Origin: Leidyana gryllorum EB-2025a
Lineage: Eukaryota > Protista > Apicomplexa
Assembly: GCA_048772705.1 (NCBI GenBank)
Contig: JBLWGC010000115.1
Location: 63,728 to 127,727 of the forward strand
Length of the DNA stretch: 64,000 bases
Reading direction: 5' to 3'
Positions 14,778-44,079 of the stretch are shown piece after piece (position 1 is the first letter of the stretch; every line of letters begins with the position of its first letter). The notes under the pieces were generated by a model. The model searched no databases, had not been told where the DNA came from, and saw nothing but the letters and a program-made list of their open reading frames with translations. The translations under genes and the position numbers were made by a program.

Positions 14778-15713
14778 ATGAATAAGGTGGTCATTTATTC
14801 ATTTGGCCTCTTGGCACTGGTGGAAGGGTCTCAGCACTCGCAAGGCAGGGCGGAATGTAGGTTCCCCTTGGACATTCTCTTCGTCAAGTCGGCCAACACT
14901 GATTTACGTTTTTCGGCTCTGGAGGCACTGAACTCATTGGGTCATGTGCTGTCAACATCCAACCCCGGCTCCTCCTACAGCATGGTAACTATGATGGGGA
15001 GCAGCTCATATGGAGGCACGTCATGTCTGCTACCCGAGAAACTAAATGTGGCCGACCCTGGGCAATTAGCCGATTCCTTCGAGACACTGCCCCCAGTTGT
15101 GGAACCGACCAGTGCCTCTAAGGCTCTTTTTACAGCAATCAATCCGAACTTCCCGTGGTCCCACCAGTCTGACGCAATTCCGTTGATCGTTTTTCTCACC
15201 AGCCAGTCACCGGATGACTTAGAGTCTGATGGCGACAACGACCCAATCTCCTCCTGCGTGGGAGCGGCGGATATCGATGCCATTCGTGCTACCCTCAACA
15301 ACTCCCCGGTATACGTCTCCACGCTGGCCTTCACTGAGGATGAGGAAGTGTATTCCAACTGGAGCGTATTCCAACACTATCTGGGGATGCCCGACTCACT
15401 CGTGGAAGGCATCAATCCTAATGAGAACTGGATCCCCAAACTGCTCAAAATGCTCCAAATCATCAGAGACTGGGAGTGCGGAGCTGACGATGGTCGCAGA
15501 TTAGCGGATTACTTTGATCTGCCAATCTTCGCCGCCACCGCCCCTTTTCCCATCGTGCAGAAGATACCCAACACTGAACCACTCGACGGAAACTGCGAGT
15601 GCCCACCAGAGAACCCCGATTGCTGTCAACGGAATCCGAAGGTCATGTTCATGCTCTACAAAAAGCCTCCTGTCGTGGACATCCATCTCAAAGGCGAGGG
15701 CTTGAGTGGTTGA
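14778..15713 (+). CDS. Secreted degenerate vWA paralogue of the upstream gene (MIDAS lost)
   Basis: Signal peptide. CRFPLDILFVKS, NPGSSYSMVT, FPWSHQSDAIPLIVFLT and WECG align to the upstream gene, and the C-terminal Cys motif is shared. Confidence 0.8.
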   Translation: MNKVVIYSFGLLALVEGSQHSQGRAECRFPLDILFVKSANTDLRFSALEALNSLGHVLSTSNPGSSYSMVTMMGSSSYGGTSCLLPEKLNVADPGQLADSFETLPPVVEPTSASKALFTAINPNFPWSHQSDAIPLIVFLTSQSPDDLESDGDNDPISSCVGAADIDAIRATLNNSPVYVSTLAFTEDEEVYSNWSVFQHYLGMPDSLVEGINPNENWIPKLLKMLQIIRDWECGADDGRRLADYFDLPIFAATAPFPIVQKIPNTEPLDGNCECPPENPDCCQRNPKVMFMLYKKPPVVDIHLKGEGLSG

Positions 15714-15761
15714 ATATTGAGTAGCTTTTATTGAATTTTAGTGAGTAGCAATTTTACACAT

Positions 15762-15775
15762 GGGTGCATGCACCC
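15762..15775. promoter_or_regulatory. Perfect palindrome GGGTGCATGCACCC containing the TGCATGCA ApiAP2-type motif
   Basis: Seen directly in intergenic DNA. TGCATGCA is a known apicomplexan ApiAP2-binding element. Confidence 0.45.
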
Positions 15776-15903
15776 TTTAGTGGCAAACAAAAAGAATTGG
15801 TACCCCACTAGCTTATGCACGGTATGTCACATATTACCGATCTTAAAGGGCACTACTGACCCGCTGCGGCAGCGCACATTCCATCAAATGGAGGGCAGTA
15901 GCT

Positions 15904-16953
15904 GCACAGGCTAAGGGTGAGTATTCGATCCAAGAGCCAAGCTTCATCCTCCTATACCATGTTGGCATTGCACGGGGAGCACGGATGTGCGACGGAGCGC
16001 GGATTGAGACTTGCTCGCAAGCCAGTCCGCGGCACCTGCACAGTCGTCCCCAGCATCTGGCGCGGGCGCCATCCCGACATAGGGATGAAGATATCTTTTT
16101 AGATATCTGACCGTGAAGTACAGGCGAGTGGATCTTGTCTCATCCCTTGATCAGGTCCTTGATGGGCATATGCCCATTATCACATCTTTTGTGATCTCTA
16201 CGTAGCTGCCATTTTGGAGGGATAGCTCAGGCAGGTCTTTGTGCTCCTCTTCCATAGTTGGTAGGCTTTTCCGCGGAAATGCGAGGCTGGCTCCCTCGCG
16301 CAAAAGGGCAACCGCGTAAACCGTAGAGCGTAGATCGTAATCGTAAACCGTAGGGGATATCACTGGAAGATAGGCAGCTAGTGCTCATGCAACAGTAGCC
16401 TCTTCATATGTGCATACATCCCAAATATAATTAACAACAAATGCCATATGCGCGCGCGGCACATTTTCAATACTAACAGCACACTAATACTCCTATCGTG
16501 TGTCGAAACGGCACACACGAGACACACACTGCAGCGAGATTGCATAGTGGGGGTCAAGCTGGCGATACCGCCAGAGTAATCTCATATTGATCAGCACTGC
16601 AGCGTAGTCGCTGATATCCGAGTGGACCGTTGATTATGGGCCTTGATCGGGCTGAAGGATAACCACCGGCACTTAAGCTGGTGGTGCCTCGAGCCGAATT
16701 GTAGCCCATTATGTGCGCTCTTTATCTCGTCTGCTCACAGTACAATTAGTATGGCTTAACTTGGCTTCTAAGATTTTTTGTGGCTCACCACAGGCACCGC
16801 GAGCTTGATAGGGACCCAAAAGGGATCTATCGACGCTTGCAGGCAGTCAGTGATGGTGTTCCCACGGTTTAAAGGCTCCAACGCGCACGTTGCCGGTGAT
16901 TGAACTCACTCGTTATCCCTACTAGAATACCCTCACCGTACCGGCCCTGTTGC
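15904..16953 (+). ncRNA. Candidate long structured non-coding RNA (~1.05 kb, family unknown)
   Basis: No credible ORF, many helices whose G-U pairs work on the + strand, and long-range pairings 15916-15926/16925-16937 and 15904-15910/16946-16953. Confidence 0.5.
16315..16355 (+). repeat. Imperfect tandem of CGTA-initiated 6-7-mers
   Basis: CGTAAAC CGTAGAG CGTAGAT CGTAAT CGTAAAC CGTAGGG. Confidence 0.7.
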
Positions 16954-17481
16954 GAGTGGAGGACAATTTCACTCAGGACGTGATCGAGATCATGTTGGAC
17001 GGGGTGATGTGTATTCCAACTATATTGGATATAAGAAGACCAATACTCTCGACTCGCCGAGCAGCTGATAGTCACAGACGCTGTCTGGAACGGGGTGATA
17101 TGGAGCAGATGGTATAAAAGAGCGGTTGAGCACAGCTAAGAACGGACAGTTGGGAATTCACGCAAGAGTGTGGTGCCCTGTTGCCGTCACATTTCAACTC
17201 TCACAATCTGCTCGTTACAAACCAGCACTGGGTGGGTGGCAATACCGGCACACCAATACAGGTGGACCCCGATGGAGCTCAGACGATCAGAACAGAACAG
17301 AACAAAGTCAGGCTTAGCCCAAAGCGAGATACTGGCGCGTTGATCTGAAGCCTCAGAGTGCGCGAGGAAGGCCTCTCAGGGGCGGTGGACAGGTCACAGG
17401 ACAGTGGCGGTGGACAAAACCCTCCATACTGCAGTCGTACTGGGGTTGTGAAAAAGAGGGGGCCAAAAAAGTTATAGCGTG

Positions 17482-18512
17482 ATGATCACTGTGCAGACTG
17501 GAGATGAGGCGGCCAGGAAATGGCCCTTGTGCGAGATGTTGATGGAGCACAAGGATCAGCTCTGGCGAGATTTGGACTTGGGGCAGCTGGTGACCTGTGG
17601 TGACGAGGTCTCAGTGCCAAGTACTGCTTTGATTGGGCACGGTATTGCCAGTGAAGAGGTGGCTGATGACTCTTTGATGGAAGAGGGTGAGGAGCCATCG
17701 GTGGAGAAGAAGGCTTTTGCGACGCTTACTGGGATTGTAACGCAAGTGAATCAATTACACTACGTGGAAGGAGTCCACAGCCGATATTTGCCGGAACCAG
17801 GTGACGTGGTGGTTGGTCGCGTGGTTGAAGTGGGACAAGGGAGGTGGTATCTGGACATAGGTGCTGTGTCCTTGGCGACCCTGCAGCTTACTGCTATATA
17901 CCTTCCGAGTGGTGAACAGAGGAGAAAGACCGAACAAGAAGCCGTTGATATGCGACAATTCTTTGTCGAAGACGATTTGGTTTCGACAGAGGTACAGAAA
18001 GTCAACATGGACGGGACCGTGATGCTACACACACGGAGTGCTCGATACGGCAAGGTACGAATGAATCTATATAAATGAACAAAGTTTGCAAACTCTGTTA
18101 ATTTCAGTTGGCTAATGGTTGTTGCGTATGCACACCGCCCACTCTGACGATGCGCTTGCCCCAGCACATGGTTCAACTGCGCAACGGGGTACACATTGTC
18201 ATTGGACGTAATGGGTAAGTCTTGGGTATGAATGGCAGCTCAAATTCGGTGTCCAGGTATCTCTTCATCAGCTCCACTCCGCAAGTAGGAGCCCAGGATA
18301 CATTGAACTTTGTGGACCAATCTCAACCTCGATACACCCCGGTCACTCTTGAGATCCGTCAGAAGATTGCCTTGACTCGAAATGCAGTTGTGTGGCTCGC
18401 TCGCAATTTCGTACAAGTATCTCCGCCTTTAATTGAGGCCGTCTGCGCCGCTGTGGAGCGTAATCGAGGATCGTTCAAGGACCTTTGGAAGGTTCTCTTC
18501 AATGTTTCGTGA
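17482..18512 (+). CDS. RRP4: Exosome complex component RRP4 (introns 18055-18107 and ~18215-18256)
   Basis: SRYLPEPGDVVVGRVVEV..WYLDI..LPSGEQRRKT..DLVSTEVQ..DGTVMLHTRSARYGK|LANG..IVIGRNGYLFI. Confidence 0.92.
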
Positions 18513-25783: not shown

Positions 25784-25819
25784 CTCTTTTTTTGAGACCT
25801 ATTTTCATCCTTCTCCACC

Positions 25820-27006
25820 ATGAACAGGAACGTCTATGACACCGACTGTGTGACCTGGAGCCCCCAAGGCAGAATCTTTCAAATCGAGTATGCCACCGAG
25901 GCCGTCAAACAGGGGAGCTGTGTAGTCGGTGTGAGAAGTAAAACTCATGCGGTGAGACAGAGACGCCCGCGGCCTATTACTTGATGTTCAGGTGCTGTGC
26001 GCCTTACGGCGGTCGGTTTCAAAGCTCGCCGAGTATAATGCCAAGCTCCTGAAGGTAGACGAACATGTTGGCGTTACGTTCTCAGGCATTACGGCCGATG
26101 CGAGTAAGCAATGAGTCCAATAGTGTGTCTTACCGACCTTCTCTAGACTTAATCGTGCGCGGACTCCGTAGTGATTGTTTAAATCACCGATACATCTACG
26201 AGGAGGACGTTCCTGTCGAGCGTCTGCTCCACAAGTTCTCCAGCAGTAAGACGGCTAATGCGGCGGAATTACTATAATCGATCTTCAGAGGCACAGCAAA
26301 ATACACAAATGATGGGAAAGAGGCCATACGGCGTTGGTTTACTGGTTGCTGGACATGATGTGAGTAACAACCACTCCGTCTGACTCATATCTGCCTAACT
26401 TTAGCACACTGGCCCTCATATCTACGAAACCAACCCAAGTGGGGACTTCGTTGAGTATTTTGTAAGTTCTGCGCGGGCGCAAGCTTATGATGCTTGGTTT
26501 GACTTTATGTGCTGGGTACATCTTTCACTTATTTGAAGAAGGATGCTTCTATGGACATGACTTTTACTTCCTGGACGTGTAGCCTGCTTAGCTGAGCGTG
26601 ACTTGATGCGCACATCGAAGTCGGCTCAGCTCTTAGCATGTGTGCTGTTGCGTGTGCACTGTCATGTGGGTTCATTGGTGAATCGGTGCCTTTTTGCAGG
26701 CTACTGCATTCGGGGCGAGATGTCAAGCTGCGAAGACCTTCCTCGAAAATGAAGCTGACAACTTCCCCAATGCCACCCCCGACCAACTAGTGAACTTTGC
26801 TCTCCGAGCATTGGCTGCGACAGTCGCTGCTGATACCGAGTTGGTCGGCGATGCTCTCCACTGTGGGATTGTAGGCGACCAGACGCCTTGGAGAGGTGAG
26901 TCATTGGGCGACTTAAAGCGAAATCAAAAGCTCATCAGTGCTAGAAGCGTCGGAACTCGATGCTAAATTGCAGGAGTTGAACCTGGTTCGCTCGAGTTCT
27001 TCTTAG
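25820..27006 (+). CDS. PSMA1: 20S proteasome subunit alpha type-1 (alpha6/Pre5); multi-exon
   Basis: [69 protein letters not shown]|[16 protein letters not shown]. Confidence 0.93.
26477..26611 (+). ncRNA. Intronic box C/D snoRNA candidate in the 238-nt proteasome intron (26462-26699)
   Basis: C box ATGATG 26487-26492, D box CTGA 26592-26595, flanking complementarity (GCGCAAG / CTTGATGCGC). GACTTTTACTTCCT (26559-26572) is antisense to the conserved 18S sequence AGGAAGUAAAAGUC. Confidence 0.7.
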
Positions 27007-27086
27007 AGTAGTATACCCAGATAGAACAGCGGGAGGGTACAAAAAGACGGCTGGGAAGTGGCCGAAATTTTCTTTGGGGTTAGCCC

Positions 27087-40745: not shown

Positions 40746-42200
40746 TCACTCTTCCCACCACAGCTTGGGACTATCTGGCAGTCTGGCTGTCAGTATCTCA
40801 CACCCTGCAAACATGTGCAACTGTCGAATCGTCCCACTCACCTTCTTCGGTGATAAGAATCTGGTGTTCGAACTGAGCGGAGCGCTTCCCATCAACAGTC
40901 ACTGCCGTCCACTGGTCGGGCCACATTTCGTCTTGATACTTTCCGCTATTGATCATAGGTTCCACAGTAAAGACTTGTCCCGCCTGCATCAAACCCTTTG
41001 CCTTGTTGTGACGGTAGTGTGGAACGTTCGGTGTAGTGTGGAACAACTCCCCGATGCCGTGTCCGCAGTATGTCGTGATCACAGAGAAGCTGTAAGCGAC
41101 AAAGTGGCAATACGTTTGACTTGTTGCTCTTACCCTTGCGGTTCCACCACATCAGCGATCGCTTTGCCCACATTTCGAACCATCTCCTTGGGTTTACACT
41201 GAGAGAAACTGTGGTCGCCTTGTCTCTGTCCACTTACAATAGCTATACCGGCCATCATGCCGTCGTGGGCAGCCTTGATAAGGCGCTTGCTATCTTCGTC
41301 CACAGTGCCCACGCAGAATGTCTCATTGAGATCACCGTGCATTCCATCGAGGAACACCGAAACATCTACGTTTATGATGTCACCGTCTTCCAGAGGTCTC
41401 AGGTCCGGGATGCCGTGGCAGACGACCTCATTGACGGAACTGGAGGCAAAGGCGCTTTAAAGTCCACCAGCTGACCTCGACAACTCACGTGCAAATCGAT
41501 TTTGGAAATCCGTAGTATCCCAGAGGTGATGGATAGGCCCCATTGCTGGTGATAAAGGTGAACAGGGCATTGTCTATCTCTTCTGGCGTGGTCCCCACTT
41601 TGCACATTGTATGTGCTAAATCCAGCGCCTTGCGGCCAAGTAGGCAGACTTTCCTGATTCGCTGAGACGAGTCCTATGTTCTCAGCAATCACTGAGCGCT
41701 GTTGCTTACCTCAACCTCACTTGGCGTATGAATCTTGGCCGCCCCGCCTCTGGCGCGCTCTTCAGCAAGTGAGCGACCACCCGGCCTATTCACATAGTCA
41801 GGTAGGGCGATGTGGGCTGGCACATCAGCCGGCAGACTGCGCGGGTACGGTCTCAACGGCCCAGTGAATTTATATTCCTTGAAACGCATCATATTGAAGT
41901 CTCTGGTCCACGTCGAAGGGTCGGCTGGATTGAAGCCGAGCTCCATGGACTTCTTGCCGACTGTTATGGTGGGTTCATCTGTTGTGTTGGTGGCAGCCAC
42001 AGCCTGGGCATGTTTGGCGCTGTGTGTCTTCCAACTGGCTTTGAAGCAGTCCTATTGAATAGATTTGAGTTGAGTGTCGGGGAAGAGGTGTGACGTACGG
42101 TTCCACAGAAATATCCGCCCTCTAATTTGAGCGACAAACACTTCGGACACCTCAACTTGGTGTCGAGTTGCTTGCCACAGCCCTCACAAACCAGCTCCAT
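40746..42200 (-). CDS. METAP1: Methionine aminopeptidase 1 (type 1b, N-terminal zinc finger); multi-exon
   Basis: [91 protein letters not shown]. Confidence 0.96.
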
Positions 42201-42232
42201 GGTACAAAAAAACTAGTCCCACGCTTGAAACC

Positions 42233-42583
42233 ATGTCTGGCCAGGTGAGAACCACTTTTAATCACTCCTTCAGGATGCCCTTTGTCAGATGGACCTTCAA
42301 GCGCTCAATCCGAAGCCATTTCTTATGAAGTTGATCGACCGGCAGGTCGCTGTTCGACTAAAATGGGGTTTGGAATACCGAGGTGGGAAGTTTCCTTTTA
42401 GATGTGTGACAACTTCCCCTCTCTTCAGGAAAGTTGGTATCCTTCGATAACTACATGAATTTTCAATTGTCGAATGCCGAAGAGTATGTTGACGGCCAGT
42501 TCAAAGGGCAGTTGGGCGAGCTTTTCATCCGCTGCAATAATGTCTTCTGGGTTAAGGGAATAGAACCCGAGCCAAGTAGCTAG
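42233..42583 (+). CDS. SNRPF: Small nuclear ribonucleoprotein SmF (two introns; not in ORF track)
   Basis: Spliced translation [67 protein letters not shown]. Confidence 0.93.
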
Positions 42584-42646
42584 CTGTCCTACGATCTATA
42601 AACAGAACAATAAATCTATCAGTGTTGTATGGTAGCTAGTGCCAAC

Positions 42647-44079
42647 ATGGCCGAACCTCTGCTTGAAGAGGTCAAAGTGAGACCCACCTCATTTCCCCTC
42701 TCCACCATCCTTCTCAGGACTCCGATGTGGAGTACTTCTCGGATGTGGGAGTAAGTCGAAGCATCAATGTATCCCATCTACTCACGAACAACAACAGTTC
42801 TACCCGGATATCCTCAGCAAGAAACCCCAGCGCACGGCTCGCAAACGAGCGGACATCCAAGCCACAGCGCGTGCTAAGCCGGATCGCATCAAGCCCACAG
42901 GCGAGGTTTGGGCTTGCTGCTGCTCCTCCGAGATCGTGAGCGAACGATTGAGCGCCCCGTCCAATCCGAATACTAGCTGCTCAATCCCTTGCAACAAGCC
43001 GCGCGGCGAAGGGTGCTCAGTTCCTCCAAAATTGAGTTGAAGTGAGGTCGCGCTAGTTAGCCCCACGCGCTTCGCAGATTCGAGACATTCTTCAGTGATG
43101 TTTTCTTCGCTTGGATTGACATCCCCGAGCCCTACTGGGCCCAGGGTAGCATGAATACTGGGCCAGGAGCTGACTCTCCCCTAACGTCGCAGAAGCGCGC
43201 GGTCGTCTTCATCTTCAAGTTCGGTAAGAACTGTTGACATCAATCAACACAAGCCGTCAAGGCTGCATCGCTGCGTGGGATCTGCCCCCGCCTTTACAAA
43301 AGGATTTGATTATATTGCTGGAGCCGTACTTGCAAGACCCTATAGAACCGGTGGAAGAAGACTCTATGAGCTTTGTGTGGGCCTATCAGCGCGCTATCCG
43401 TCAAGACGTAATTCATCTGGTCTCTGAGGACCACTTTGAGCGACTCGCGTATTCTTATGCATTCGCGCAAAGCTGCAAACTGTCCGTTTTCGAGGAGCGT
43501 GTCGAACAAACTATCGATCGTACACGGTCAGTGCCTGGTGAGCTTGTAATCAAATCAGCGTAAGCAATGCTGAACGTGAACAGAGAACTTGGCACGAACG
43601 GGGAAGATCTCAGCTAATCGTGATGAGATATCAAAGCGGATCGGCGAGTTGTTCATAGTTCGATTTTACATCAATTTGCACACTGACATCCTGGACACAC
43701 CAGGTGGGACATGGCGTCAGAGGCCTGTGACACACTCTCGATTCGAACAGACGTGTTTTGGGAGTTCGACGAGTTTGCTGATCATTACACCTCGTGTCGA
43801 AGCTACCTCGAGTTACCAAAACGCGTGGAGATTCTGAATCAGCGGTAAGTGGTCCTGCTTTCTGGGACAAAGGTGGGCAGACTGGACATCATGAAAGATT
43901 TATATGATATGTTGAATCAAGAGTTGACAATCCAGGTGTGTGTGATTGGTTGTCGGTACCTTACATTCTTGTAGCACGGCTACAAATTGGAGTGGATAGT
44001 TATTTACCTGATCTGTGTCGAGGTATTCATCTCGGTGGTTTGGAACATTCTTATTCGTGATGTGCTCAAGCTCGTGTGA
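42647..44079 (+). CDS. RMD1/DUF155 family protein; many short introns
   Basis: VFIFKFG, ERLAYSYAFAQSCKLSVFE, KRIGELFIVRFYINLHTDILDTP, YLELPKRVEILNQR, HGYKLEWIVIYLICVEV (C-terminal TM). Confidence 0.88.

What the first reader, a model, noticed from the sequence alone, without database searches (positions are those of the whole stretch)
15904..16953. Unannotated ~1 kb highly structured + strand RNA candidate in the largest gene-free gap
Seen: the 15714-17481 gap is about 1.8 kb where most gaps are under 100 bp, and it holds no credible ORF. It is packed with helices: CTTCATCC/GGATGAAG (15942/16090), ATGTTGG/CCGACAT, GCGGATTG/CAGTCCGC, AGATATCT-TTTT-AGATATCT (16089-16108), ATGGGCATATGCCCAT (16162-16177), TAGCTGCC/GGCAGCTA (16203/16380), hairpin 16496-16520, CTGGCG-ATAC-CGCCAG (16559-16574), GAGATTGC/GTAATCTC, ACCACCGGC/GCTGGTGGT (16662-16685), ATACTAA/TTAGTAT (16470/16752) and rod 16799-16840. 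The non-Watson-Crick pairs in the stems I checked read as G-U on the + strand, which argues for a + strand RNA rather than DNA palindromes. Long-range pairings 15916-15926/16925-16937 and 15904-15910/16946-16953 close the whole unit. An Sm-site-like or Pol III terminator-like AUUUUUUG lies at 16773-16780 and a TATA-like AATATAAT near 16424. I could not find signature motifs of spliceosomal snRNAs, SRP or RNase P/MRP. Inference: a long ncRNA (telomerase RNA is one candidate of this size) or a cluster of novel ncRNAs.
Basis: partly seen in the sequence, partly recalled or inferred. Interest (0 to 1): 0.8.

Follow-up and report, generated by a model that had tools for sequence, protein, structure and literature searches.

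The report
Two folded islands in non-coding gap
The largest gene-free stretch in this piece of a gregarine parasite genome really is non-coding and holds two roughly 200-240-base segments that fold far better than chance, so it may encode one or two unknown small RNAs, but nothing shows that it is transcribed, and it is not one 1-kb RNA or a recognisable telomerase RNA.

Summary
The gap 15714-17481 lies between a vWA-like gene and RRP4, both on the + strand. It is real, single-copy and non-coding. It has no ORF of 100 codons, no 3-base periodicity, no Pfam hit, no hidden spliced ORF and no relic of neighbouring genes.

The 1050-nt unit folds better than shuffles (z about -4.4), but equally on both strands. 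The excess sits in two islands:
- **Domain A (15913-16148):** a robust ~236-nt branched hairpin, z -3.2 on + and -2.7 on -.
- **Domain B (16531-16735):** three robust hairpins in a possible four-way junction, z -5.3 on + and -4.0 on -.

Behind domain B comes a tail with a T6 run and a small hairpin. The 300 nt between the islands is unstructured.

Other non-coding gaps in the window have z near 0. No Rfam family matches, and no paralog or homolog was found. No RNA run was listed.

This genome's U1, U2, U4, U5, U6, SRP and P/MRP-like RNA genes lie elsewhere. Domain B lacks the promoter and 3' box its own snRNA genes carry. No canonical telomere template is present, and the telomere repeat is unknown.

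Best reading: an unclassified structured ncRNA candidate, unproven. This scan had already noted the same stretch twice.

The parts
15714..17481 (.). Non-coding, single-copy gap between the stop codon of a vWA-like gene (+ strand, ends 15713) and the ATG of RRP4 (+ strand, 17482)
   Evidence: define the gap and its flanks; the only copy in the 15.5-Mb genome; no Pfam family in 10 ORFs; 3-base periodicity of 1.6-2.7 against a window median of 4.3; longest spliced ORF is 252 nt (+) and 291 nt (-), against 381 +/- 123 in shuffles; no relic of neighbouring proteins; the RRP4 N-terminus is complete without the gap.
15762..15775 (.). Perfect 14-bp zero-loop palindrome GGGTGCATGCACCC, containing TGCATGCA
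   Evidence: TGCATGCA occurs once in the window against 1.5 expected. The 12-mer core is unique in the genome.
15913..16148 (+). Domain A: a ~236-nt imperfect long hairpin. It has an apical hairpin at 15999-16030 and side hairpins at 16070-16087 and 16089-16108.
   Evidence: z -3.18 on + (2 of 200 shuffles as good) and -2.71 on -. Its helices have pair probabilities of 0.80-0.97 in local folding, and it has the highest density of confident pairs in the region. It also forms in the 1.9-kb fold.
16162..16177 (.). Perfect 16-bp zero-loop palindrome ATGGGCATATGCCCAT, followed by the hairpin ATCACA/TGTGAT at 16179-16195
   Evidence: The core GGGCATATGCCC is unique in the genome.
16315..16355 (+). 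Array of CGTA-headed heptamers containing CGTAAACCGTA twice. It lies in the unstructured middle segment.
   Evidence: Sequence. It is the nearest thing to a TTTAGGG-type template, at 2 mismatches in 11. No TTTACGG array exists in the genome. The segment 16160-16470 folds at chance.
16496..16520 (.). Split palindrome TCGTGTGT...ACACACGA. It resembles this genome's U2 promoter word GTGTGYCGCACAC but carries 6 extra central bases.
   Evidence: It is the top hit of a U2-promoter profile in the whole window, but only at E 0.45 and on the - strand. The genuine motif has 17 exact sites in the genome against 0 for the reversed control.
16531..16735 (+). Domain B: three robust hairpins (16543-16589 with 16559-16574 inside, 16590-16615, and 16620-16720 with apex 16662-16685). 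In isolation they are closed by a 10-bp helix, 16531-16540 with 16725-16735.
   Evidence: z -5.34 on + (0 of 200) and -3.97 on - (0 of 200); the MFE and centroid structures are nearly the same. The inner hairpins have p 0.8-0.97, but the closing helix falls below p 0.7 in local folding and is replaced in the 1.9-kb fold.
16540..16550 (+). TTGCATAGTGG, a 10-of-11 match to the tRNA-type A box TRGCNNAGTGG, about 10 nt into domain B
   Evidence: Sequence. A match this good is expected about 0.05 times in the gap (my estimate). No B box was found.
16773..16793 (+). ATTTTTTG (a T6 run, or an Sm-like site) overlapping a 6-bp hairpin at 16778-16793
   Evidence: U6 and SRP RNA genes of this genome end in T5. 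Its U1, U4 and U5 genes have AAUUUNUGR followed by a hairpin and then YGACA, and that GACA box is absent here.
16799..16840 (+). 42-nt rod hairpin
   Evidence: p 0.95-0.96. The segment 16740-17020 gives z -1.83 on + against +0.41 on -.

Best explanation
The gap holds at least one independent, single-copy gene for a small structured non-coding RNA of no described family, read from the + strand.

The best candidate is about 250 nt long. It starts near 16531 and comprises the three-hairpin domain B, a ~40-nt mostly unpaired tail and the run of six T at 16774-16779. The T run would act as an RNA polymerase III terminator, as in this genome's U6 and SRP RNA genes. Less likely, it is an Sm-protein site followed by the small hairpin at 16778-16793.

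Domain A (15913-16148) would be a second, separate hairpin RNA, or else a DNA-level inverted repeat.

What is shown: the DNA is non-coding and unique, and these two islands fold far better than chance and than other gaps.

What is inferred: that they are transcribed, the strand, the ends, the polymerase and any function. The function is most likely a scaffold for a ribonucleoprotein.
For: - **Non-coding.** Five independent tests agree.
- **An outlier in a compact genome.** It is the longest stretch of the window with no stop-free frame of 100 codons.
- **Domain B folds well.** z -5.34 with 0 of 200 shuffles as good, and a well-defined ensemble.
- **Domain A folds well.** z -3.18, with pair probabilities of 0.8-0.97.
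- **Other gaps do not.** Seventeen 210-nt tiles from six other non-coding gaps of the same window gave z from -1.95 to +2.2.
- **Local + strand preference from 16528 to 17020.** z is -5.3 against -4.0 for domain B, and -1.8 against +0.4 for the tail.
- **Terminator-like T6.** It lies 38 nt behind domain B, and Pol III genes here end in T5.
- **A-box-like word.** It sits about 10 nt into domain B.
- **Promoter-like palindrome.** The best match in the window to the U2 promoter profile lies 11-35 nt upstream of domain B.
Against: - No expression data: no RNA run was listed.
- No covariation is possible. A covariance model of domain B finds no paralog in the genome and nothing in the Gregarina niphandrodes RRP4 locus, which shares neither synteny nor DNA similarity.
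- At the 1-kb scale both strands fold equally well, and domain A is nearly strand-symmetric. This would also fit DNA inverted repeats.
- Two of the palindromes have no loop, so they cannot be RNA hairpins as such.
- Domain B's closing helix is not robust to sequence context.
- The promoter-like palindrome has the wrong spacing and only E 0.45.
- There is no B box, no TATA at -30 and no GACA 3' box.
- The A-box, T-run and Sm-like matches are each within reach of chance and were found post hoc.
- The known small-RNA genes found in this genome (U1, U2, U4, U5, U6, SRP) are multi-copy; this locus is not.
Confidence: 0.4

Rival explanations
1. The gap is ordinary regulatory or untranslated DNA: the 3' UTR and terminator of the vWA gene plus an unusually long promoter or 5' UTR of RRP4. 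The palindromes would be protein-binding sites or cruciform-prone DNA. The folded islands would be cis elements of an mRNA, or have no RNA role at all.
For: - Both flanking genes are on the + strand, so a terminator and a promoter must lie here.
- Zero-loop perfect palindromes are enriched: 2 seen against 0.27 expected, with 3 of 200 shuffles reaching that count. These are typical of dimeric DNA-binding sites.
- One palindrome contains TGCATGCA, which I recall from memory as a known ApiAP2 target in other Apicomplexa.
- Folding is equally good on both strands at the 1-kb scale.
- GTGAGT at 15918 could mark a 5' UTR intron.
Against: - That leaves 1.77 kb unexplained.
- The palindromes are unique in the genome, so they are not recurrent motifs. 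TGCATGCA is not enriched.
- Six other gaps in the window, including promoter-bearing ones, fold at chance level.
- The region 16528-17020 shows a + strand preference that DNA symmetry does not predict.
Confidence: 0.3
2. The gap is a decaying remnant of a lost gene or mobile element with no present function. Its hairpins would be leftovers of terminal or internal inverted repeats.
For: - G. niphandrodes has different genes upstream of RRP4, so the neighbourhood has been rearranged.
- Domain A is a long, strand-symmetric inverted repeat.
- The genome carries LTR elements and dispersed repeats.
Against: - It is single-copy at the DNA level and at the structure level.
- It has no protein similarity to anything in the window or in Pfam, and no residual codon periodicity.
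- A compact genome with such short gaps would be expected to delete useless DNA (inference).
Confidence: 0.15
3. It is the telomerase RNA. The template would lie in the unstructured middle, for instance CGTAAACCGTA at 16315 and 16342, and domains A and B would serve as protein-binding arms.
For: - It has the expected profile: single-copy, long, matched by no Rfam family, and partly structured.
- The other abundant small RNAs tested (U1, U2, U4, U5, U6, SRP, P/MRP-like) are accounted for elsewhere.
- CGTAAACCGTA has the repeat-plus-partial-repeat shape of a template.
Against: - No match of 8 nt or more to a template for TTTAGGG, TTAGGG or TTTAGG on either strand.
- The variant repeat TTTACGG that CGTAAACCGTA would encode is found nowhere in the assembly.
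- The only telomere-type words in the genome are of the TTTAGGG type, at one promoter-proximal site.
- No Rfam telomerase family matches.
Confidence: 0.05

Closest known systems
Small Pol III transcripts with an internal promoter and T-run terminator (the SRP RNA and U6 genes of this same genome; from memory, the A/B-box RUF6 ncRNAs that sit among adhesin-type var genes in Plasmodium falciparum)
   Same: The candidate is about 250 nt and highly folded, and is followed by T6 where this genome's U6 and SRP genes end in T5. It has an A-box-like word near the presumed start. It lies next to a tandem pair of secreted vWA adhesin-like genes.
   Different: There is no B box, no sequence or Rfam similarity to SRP, U6 or any RUF family, only a single copy, and no evidence of transcription.
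Sm-class spliceosomal snRNA genes of this genome (U1, U2, U4, U5)
   Same: An AU6G site is followed directly by a short hairpin, as at the 3' ends of its U1, U4 and U5 genes. A GTGTG...CACAC palindrome lies upstream, as in its U2 genes.
   Different: The palindrome has 6 extra central bases and scores only E 0.45. The YGACA 3' box is missing. No Rfam snRNA model matches. The fold is unlike any snRNA.
Telomerase RNA (the Plasmodium TER was predicted by Chakrabarti et al. with template ACCCUGAACCC, as cited in PMC5550746; TER inference otherwise failed for Apicomplexa, PMC9841428)
   Same: It is a single-copy RNA candidate with no family match, in a genome reported to have TERT.
   Different: There is no template for any canonical repeat, no closed core, and the telomere repeat of this organism is unknown.

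Membership tests
Telomerase RNA | A single-stranded template complementary to about 1.3-1.5 telomere repeats | tested here: not met
   no exact match of 8 nt or more to (CCCTAAA)n, (CCCTAA)n or (CCTAAA)n on either strand. The best is CGTAAACCGTA, with 2 mismatches in 11. The only exact (CCCTAAAA)n 8-mer is at 17416, next to the RRP4 start. Caveat: the organism's real repeat is unknown. No arrays were found in the assembly or at 40 contig ends.
Telomerase RNA | Core-enclosing helix, template boundary element and pseudoknot around the template | tested here: inconclusive
The segment holding the only template-like words (16160-16470) folds at chance. Pseudoknots were not modelled.
Telomerase RNA | Match to a curated TER family, or binding to TERT | tested here: not met
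   No Rfam hit. TERT binding cannot be tested with these tools.
Sm-class snRNA gene (as built in this genome) | Upstream promoter word GTGTGYCGCACAC about 45 nt before the start | tested here: inconclusive
   Only a split variant is present, at 16498-16518. It is the top profile hit in the window but at E 0.45 and on the - strand. The exact word was seen only upstream of U2 genes. The U1, U4 and U5 upstream regions carry looser GGGAC or CACAC words.
Sm-class snRNA gene (as built in this genome) | An Sm site followed by a terminal hairpin | tested here: met
   AUUUUUUG at 16773-16780 and a hairpin at 16778-16793. About 0.6 such sites per strand are expected by chance in the gap (my estimate).
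Sm-class snRNA gene (as built in this genome) | A YGACA 3' box right after the terminal hairpin | tested here: not met
   It is present behind most of the 27 U1, U2, U4 and U5 genes inspected. The sequence after 16793 reads AGGCACCG.
Pol III small RNA gene | A terminator run of 5 or more T | tested here: met
   T6 at 16774-16779. U6 and SRP genes here end in T5.
Pol III small RNA gene | Internal A and B boxes, or an upstream TATA at about -30 | tested here: inconclusive
   The A box matches 10 of 11 at 16540-16550. No B box better than 6 of 9 was found. AATATAAT at 16424 lies about 100 nt upstream of domain B.
Box C/D or H/ACA snoRNA cluster | C box RUGAUGA with D box CUGA, or a hairpin-hinge-hairpin-ACA layout; or a match to curated families | tested here: not met
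   There is no UGAUGA in the gap on either strand; the only one is at the RRP4 start, 17481. There are no significant Rfam snoRNA hits; the best, sR53, has E 0.79 and lies inside RRP4.
Known housekeeping RNAs (SRP, RNase P/MRP, U1, U2, U4, U5, U6) | A covariance-model match | tested here: not met
   There are no hits in the gap. All of these RNAs are found elsewhere in the genome.
Protein-coding gene (intact, spliced or decayed) | An ORF, codon periodicity, homology, or a splice-joined ORF | tested here: not met
Multicopy transposon fragment | Further copies in the genome | tested here: not met
   DNA search, only itself; covariance model, only itself.

The most novel reading that the evidence does not exclude
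The gap encodes the long-sought gregarine telomerase RNA. Its template would be the duplicated CGUAAACCGUA, specifying a TTTACGG-type telomere not known, as far as I recall, in any organism. That would also explain why no canonical telomere array appears in the assembly. A milder version: domain B is the founding member of a gregarine-specific Pol III RNA class placed beside adhesin genes.
Probability: 0.04. Interest if true: 0.8.

Novelty: new member of a known kind. Interest (0 to 1): 0.3.

Why it matters
Gregarines are early-branching relatives of malaria and Cryptosporidium parasites, and almost nothing is known of their non-coding RNAs. In a genome this tightly packed, 1.8 kb that codes for nothing is likely to be kept for a reason. 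A validated new structured RNA here would add to the small list of lineage-specific apicomplexan RNAs, and it would help the search for the still-missing telomerase RNA of this group. As it stands, the case rests on folding energy alone, so it is a lead for an RNA-seq or northern experiment rather than a discovery.

Tried and rejected
**RNA families**
- Rfam at gathering threshold on the whole window, and at E up to 10 on 15400-17800 and on 16480-16860, gave nothing credible.
- ARAGORN found no tRNA.

**Expression**
- No RNA run was listed.

**Comparative data**
- The nearest RRP4 is from Gregarina niphandrodes at 55% identity. Its locus has no synteny and no DNA similarity, and no match to the domain B model.
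- The Blabericola protein has no DNA on record.

**Paralogs**
- BLAST and a covariance model of domain B found only the locus itself.

**Coding tests**
- Two home-made codon models were too weak to discriminate and were dropped.
- They were replaced by periodicity (74), Pfam (58), tblastn of neighbouring proteins (93) and a spliced-ORF search (97). All were negative.

**Telomere repeat**
- Patterns for TTAGGG, TTTAGGG and TTTTAGGG, TTTACGG, TTTAGG and a GGCTTAACTT repeat suggested by the tail found no arrays.
- Forty contig ends carry no repeats.
- The Pfam telomerase RBD search was uninformative, because its controls did not ring either.

**Recurrent regulatory motifs**
- Both large palindromes are unique in the genome, and TGCATGCA is not enriched.

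**Short shared words judged to be chance**
- TCTTCATAT is shared with the U6 upstream region, and ACTAACAG with the SRP upstream region.
- The GTGAGT...TACTAACAG pair looked intron-like. However, introns here are 45-55 nt, and other notes of this scan report that the U2 RNAs lack branch-site pairing.

**Technical notes**
- My first stem counter was faulty and was replaced.

Full report
**Context**

The window is G000:C115:63728-127727 of a 15.5-Mb, 237-contig genome. The RRP4 gene downstream of the finding is most similar to that of Gregarina niphandrodes (55% identity). A Blabericola migrator sequence is 65% identical over part of its length. The organism is therefore a eugregarine apicomplexan.

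The gap runs from the stop codon of a + strand vWA-like gene (15713) to the ATG of RRP4 (17482, + strand). RRP4 aligns with its G. niphandrodes orthologue from residue 36 of ours to residue 25 of theirs. Its N-terminus is therefore complete, and the gap is not a missing exon.

Largely, yes.
- The stretch 15711-17451 is the longest part of the window with no stop-free frame of 100 codons. It measures 1741 nt against 1285 nt for the next.
Four coordinates are off by a few bases.
- The 1050-nt unit folds at -384.5 kcal/mol against -344.8 +/- 9.0 for dinucleotide shuffles, z -4.4. Two coding controls of the same length gave z -1.9 and +1.4.

Three parts of the description do not hold.
- **Strand.** The - strand is just as far from its own shuffles (z -4.5).
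- **Distribution.** The excess is not spread over 1 kb. It lies in domain A (15900-16160: z -3.18 on +, -2.71 on -) and domain B (16528-16738: z -5.34 on +, -3.97 on -). The 310 nt between them fold at chance (z -0.57 and -0.97).
- **Closure.** The long-range pairings said to close the unit vanish when 15650-17550 is folded. Each arm finds a nearer partner instead. In local folding none of them reaches a probability of 0.7.

Counts of short perfect stems are only mildly above shuffles.

**How unusual are the islands?**

Seventeen 210-nt tiles from six other non-coding gaps of the same window gave z between -1.95 and +2.2 on both strands. In 150-nt tiles over the coding flanks, the lowest values were about -3.3. 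Domain B, with 0 of 200 shuffles as good and a nearly identical MFE and centroid, is a clear outlier. Domain A is a moderate one.

Local pair probabilities support two structures.
- Domain A is a ~236-nt branched hairpin (15913-16148, helices at p 0.80-0.97).
- Domain B has three robust hairpins: 16559-16574, 16590-16615, and 16636-16709 with its apex at 16662-16685.

Domain B's 10-bp closing helix (16531-16540 with 16725-16735) depends on sequence context.

From 16528 to 17020 the + strand is consistently the better folder. This is the only strand signal in the region.

**What it is not**

- **Not protein-coding.** Ten ORFs gave no Pfam family. 3-base periodicity is in the lowest tenth of the window. 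The longest ORF obtainable with up to three introns is shorter than in shuffled sequence. No neighbouring protein left a trace.
- **Not repetitive.** It is the only copy by BLAST and by a covariance model of domain B.
- **Not a known RNA family**, and it contains no tRNA.
- **Not one of the standard small RNAs.** All of these are found elsewhere in the genome:
  - U2, 11 hits, plus two more found through their promoter
  - U5, 14 hits
  - U4, 5 hits
  - U1, at least 42 hits
  - U6, 8 hits
  - SRP RNA, 10 hits
  - a P/MRP-type RNA

**Testing the gap against this genome's own RNA-gene grammar**

The genome's snRNA genes gave a usable yardstick.
- U2 genes carry GTGTGYCGCACAC about 45 nt upstream. 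The genome has 17 exact sites against 0 for the reversed control.
- Sm-class genes end with an Sm site, a short hairpin and YGACA.
- U6 and SRP genes end in T5.

The gap measures up as follows.
- It has a GTGTGTCG...GCACACAC palindrome at 16498-16518, just upstream of domain B. This is the best match to a U2-promoter profile in the whole window. However, it has six extra central bases, scores only E 0.45 and aligns on the - strand.
- AUUUUUUG plus the hairpin at 16778-16793 resembles an snRNA 3' end, but the GACA box is missing.
- Read as a Pol III gene, domain B has a 10-of-11 A-box word at 16540-16550 and T6 at 16774-16779. It has no B box and no TATA at -30.

Each of these matches is individually within reach of chance, and all were found after the fact. 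I treat them as leads only.

**Telomerase RNA**

Neither strand contains 8 or more nt of a template for TTTAGGG, TTAGGG or TTTAGG. Otherwise the nearest is the duplicated CGTAAACCGTA in the heptamer array at 16315-16355, with 2 mismatches in 11.

The repeat that word would encode, TTTACGG, occurs nowhere as an array. But no telomere array of any tested type is in the assembly either, and 40 contig ends carry none. The organism's repeat is therefore unknown.

The only TTTAGGG-type word of 2.4 units lies 10 nt upstream of an ABC-transporter start codon. It looks like a promoter element.

For reference, the Plasmodium TER template is given as ACCCUGAACCC (PMC5550746), and TER prediction has otherwise failed in Apicomplexa (PMC9841428). 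I rate the telomerase reading at about 5%.

**Comparative evidence**

None could be had.
- The G. niphandrodes RRP4 locus has different neighbours, no DNA similarity upstream and no model match.
- No closer relative is on record.
- No RNA run was listed.

**Verdict**

The finding is a real anomaly: a unique 1.77-kb non-coding stretch in a tightly packed genome, with two islands of strong predicted structure.

| Reading | Confidence |
|---|---|
| Unannotated structured RNA gene(s): chiefly a ~250-nt + strand RNA spanning domain B to the T6 run, with domain A a possible second hairpin RNA | 0.4 |
| Regulatory or UTR DNA | 0.3 |
| Decayed remnant of a lost gene or mobile element | 0.15 |
| Telomerase RNA | 0.05 |

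The evidence is thermodynamic only, so interest is moderate to low until a transcript is shown.

The same stretch was already noted twice by first readers of this scan (s1-583484 and s1-583735).

Noticed in passing
G000:C12:47631-48560; C152:1015-2118; C186:83616-84656; C33:31188-32236; C85:25188-25910; C159:47933-48997; C82:287244-287693 and 289887-290937: U5, SRP RNA and U1 genes recur together as a cassette of roughly 1-1.5 kb in at least eight places. The gene order is conserved and orientation varies between copies. This is an unusual linkage of a Pol III gene with two Pol II snRNA genes.
   Followed up: partly
G000:C216:5002-16060: A tandem array of at least 20 U1 snRNA genes with a 342-nt period.
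   Followed up: no
L025-L035, L049, L050 (U2 loci), about 45 nt upstream of each gene: U2 genes share the palindromic word GTGTGYCGCACAC, often preceded by GGGAC and followed by GGTAT. The genome has 17 exact sites against 0 for the reversed control. Sm-class snRNA genes end in a hairpin plus YGACA. This looks like the snRNA promoter and 3' box of this lineage.
   Followed up: partly
G000:C36:10674, C71:24152, C148:12291 and 12514 (L036, L037, L043, L044): A dispersed repeat of a few hundred bases also carries GTGTGCCGCACAC followed by TTGGGAC words. The C71 copy lies beside a weak, partial LSU rRNA match and five tRNA genes.
   Followed up: no
G000:C12:6957-6973 (L023:1501-1517): GGGTTTAGGGTTTAGGG sits 10 nt upstream of the ATG of a - strand ABC-transporter gene. 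It is the only telomere-type word of more than two units in the assembly.
   Followed up: partly
40 contig ends (L002-L021, L070-L109): No contig end inspected carries a telomere-like repeat, including both ends of the 1.7-Mb and 1.27-Mb contigs. Several short contigs start inside tRNA genes.
   Followed up: partly
G000:C104, just downstream of the U1 gene at 252782-252944 (L064): A C-rich repeat of the CCCTTCCCTC type begins directly after the U1 3' end.
   Followed up: no
window 25799-27083 and 42052-42680: These are the next largest ORF-free stretches of the window. Neither folds better than shuffled sequence, and neither has an Rfam hit.
   Followed up: partly
G000:C215, C4, C27, C38, C61, C66 (L110-L116): Seven nearly identical U6 genes share at least 70 nt of nearly identical upstream sequence (140 nt in five of them), so they lie in a repeated unit. 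An eighth U6 gene (C159:138586) has a different flank.
   Followed up: no
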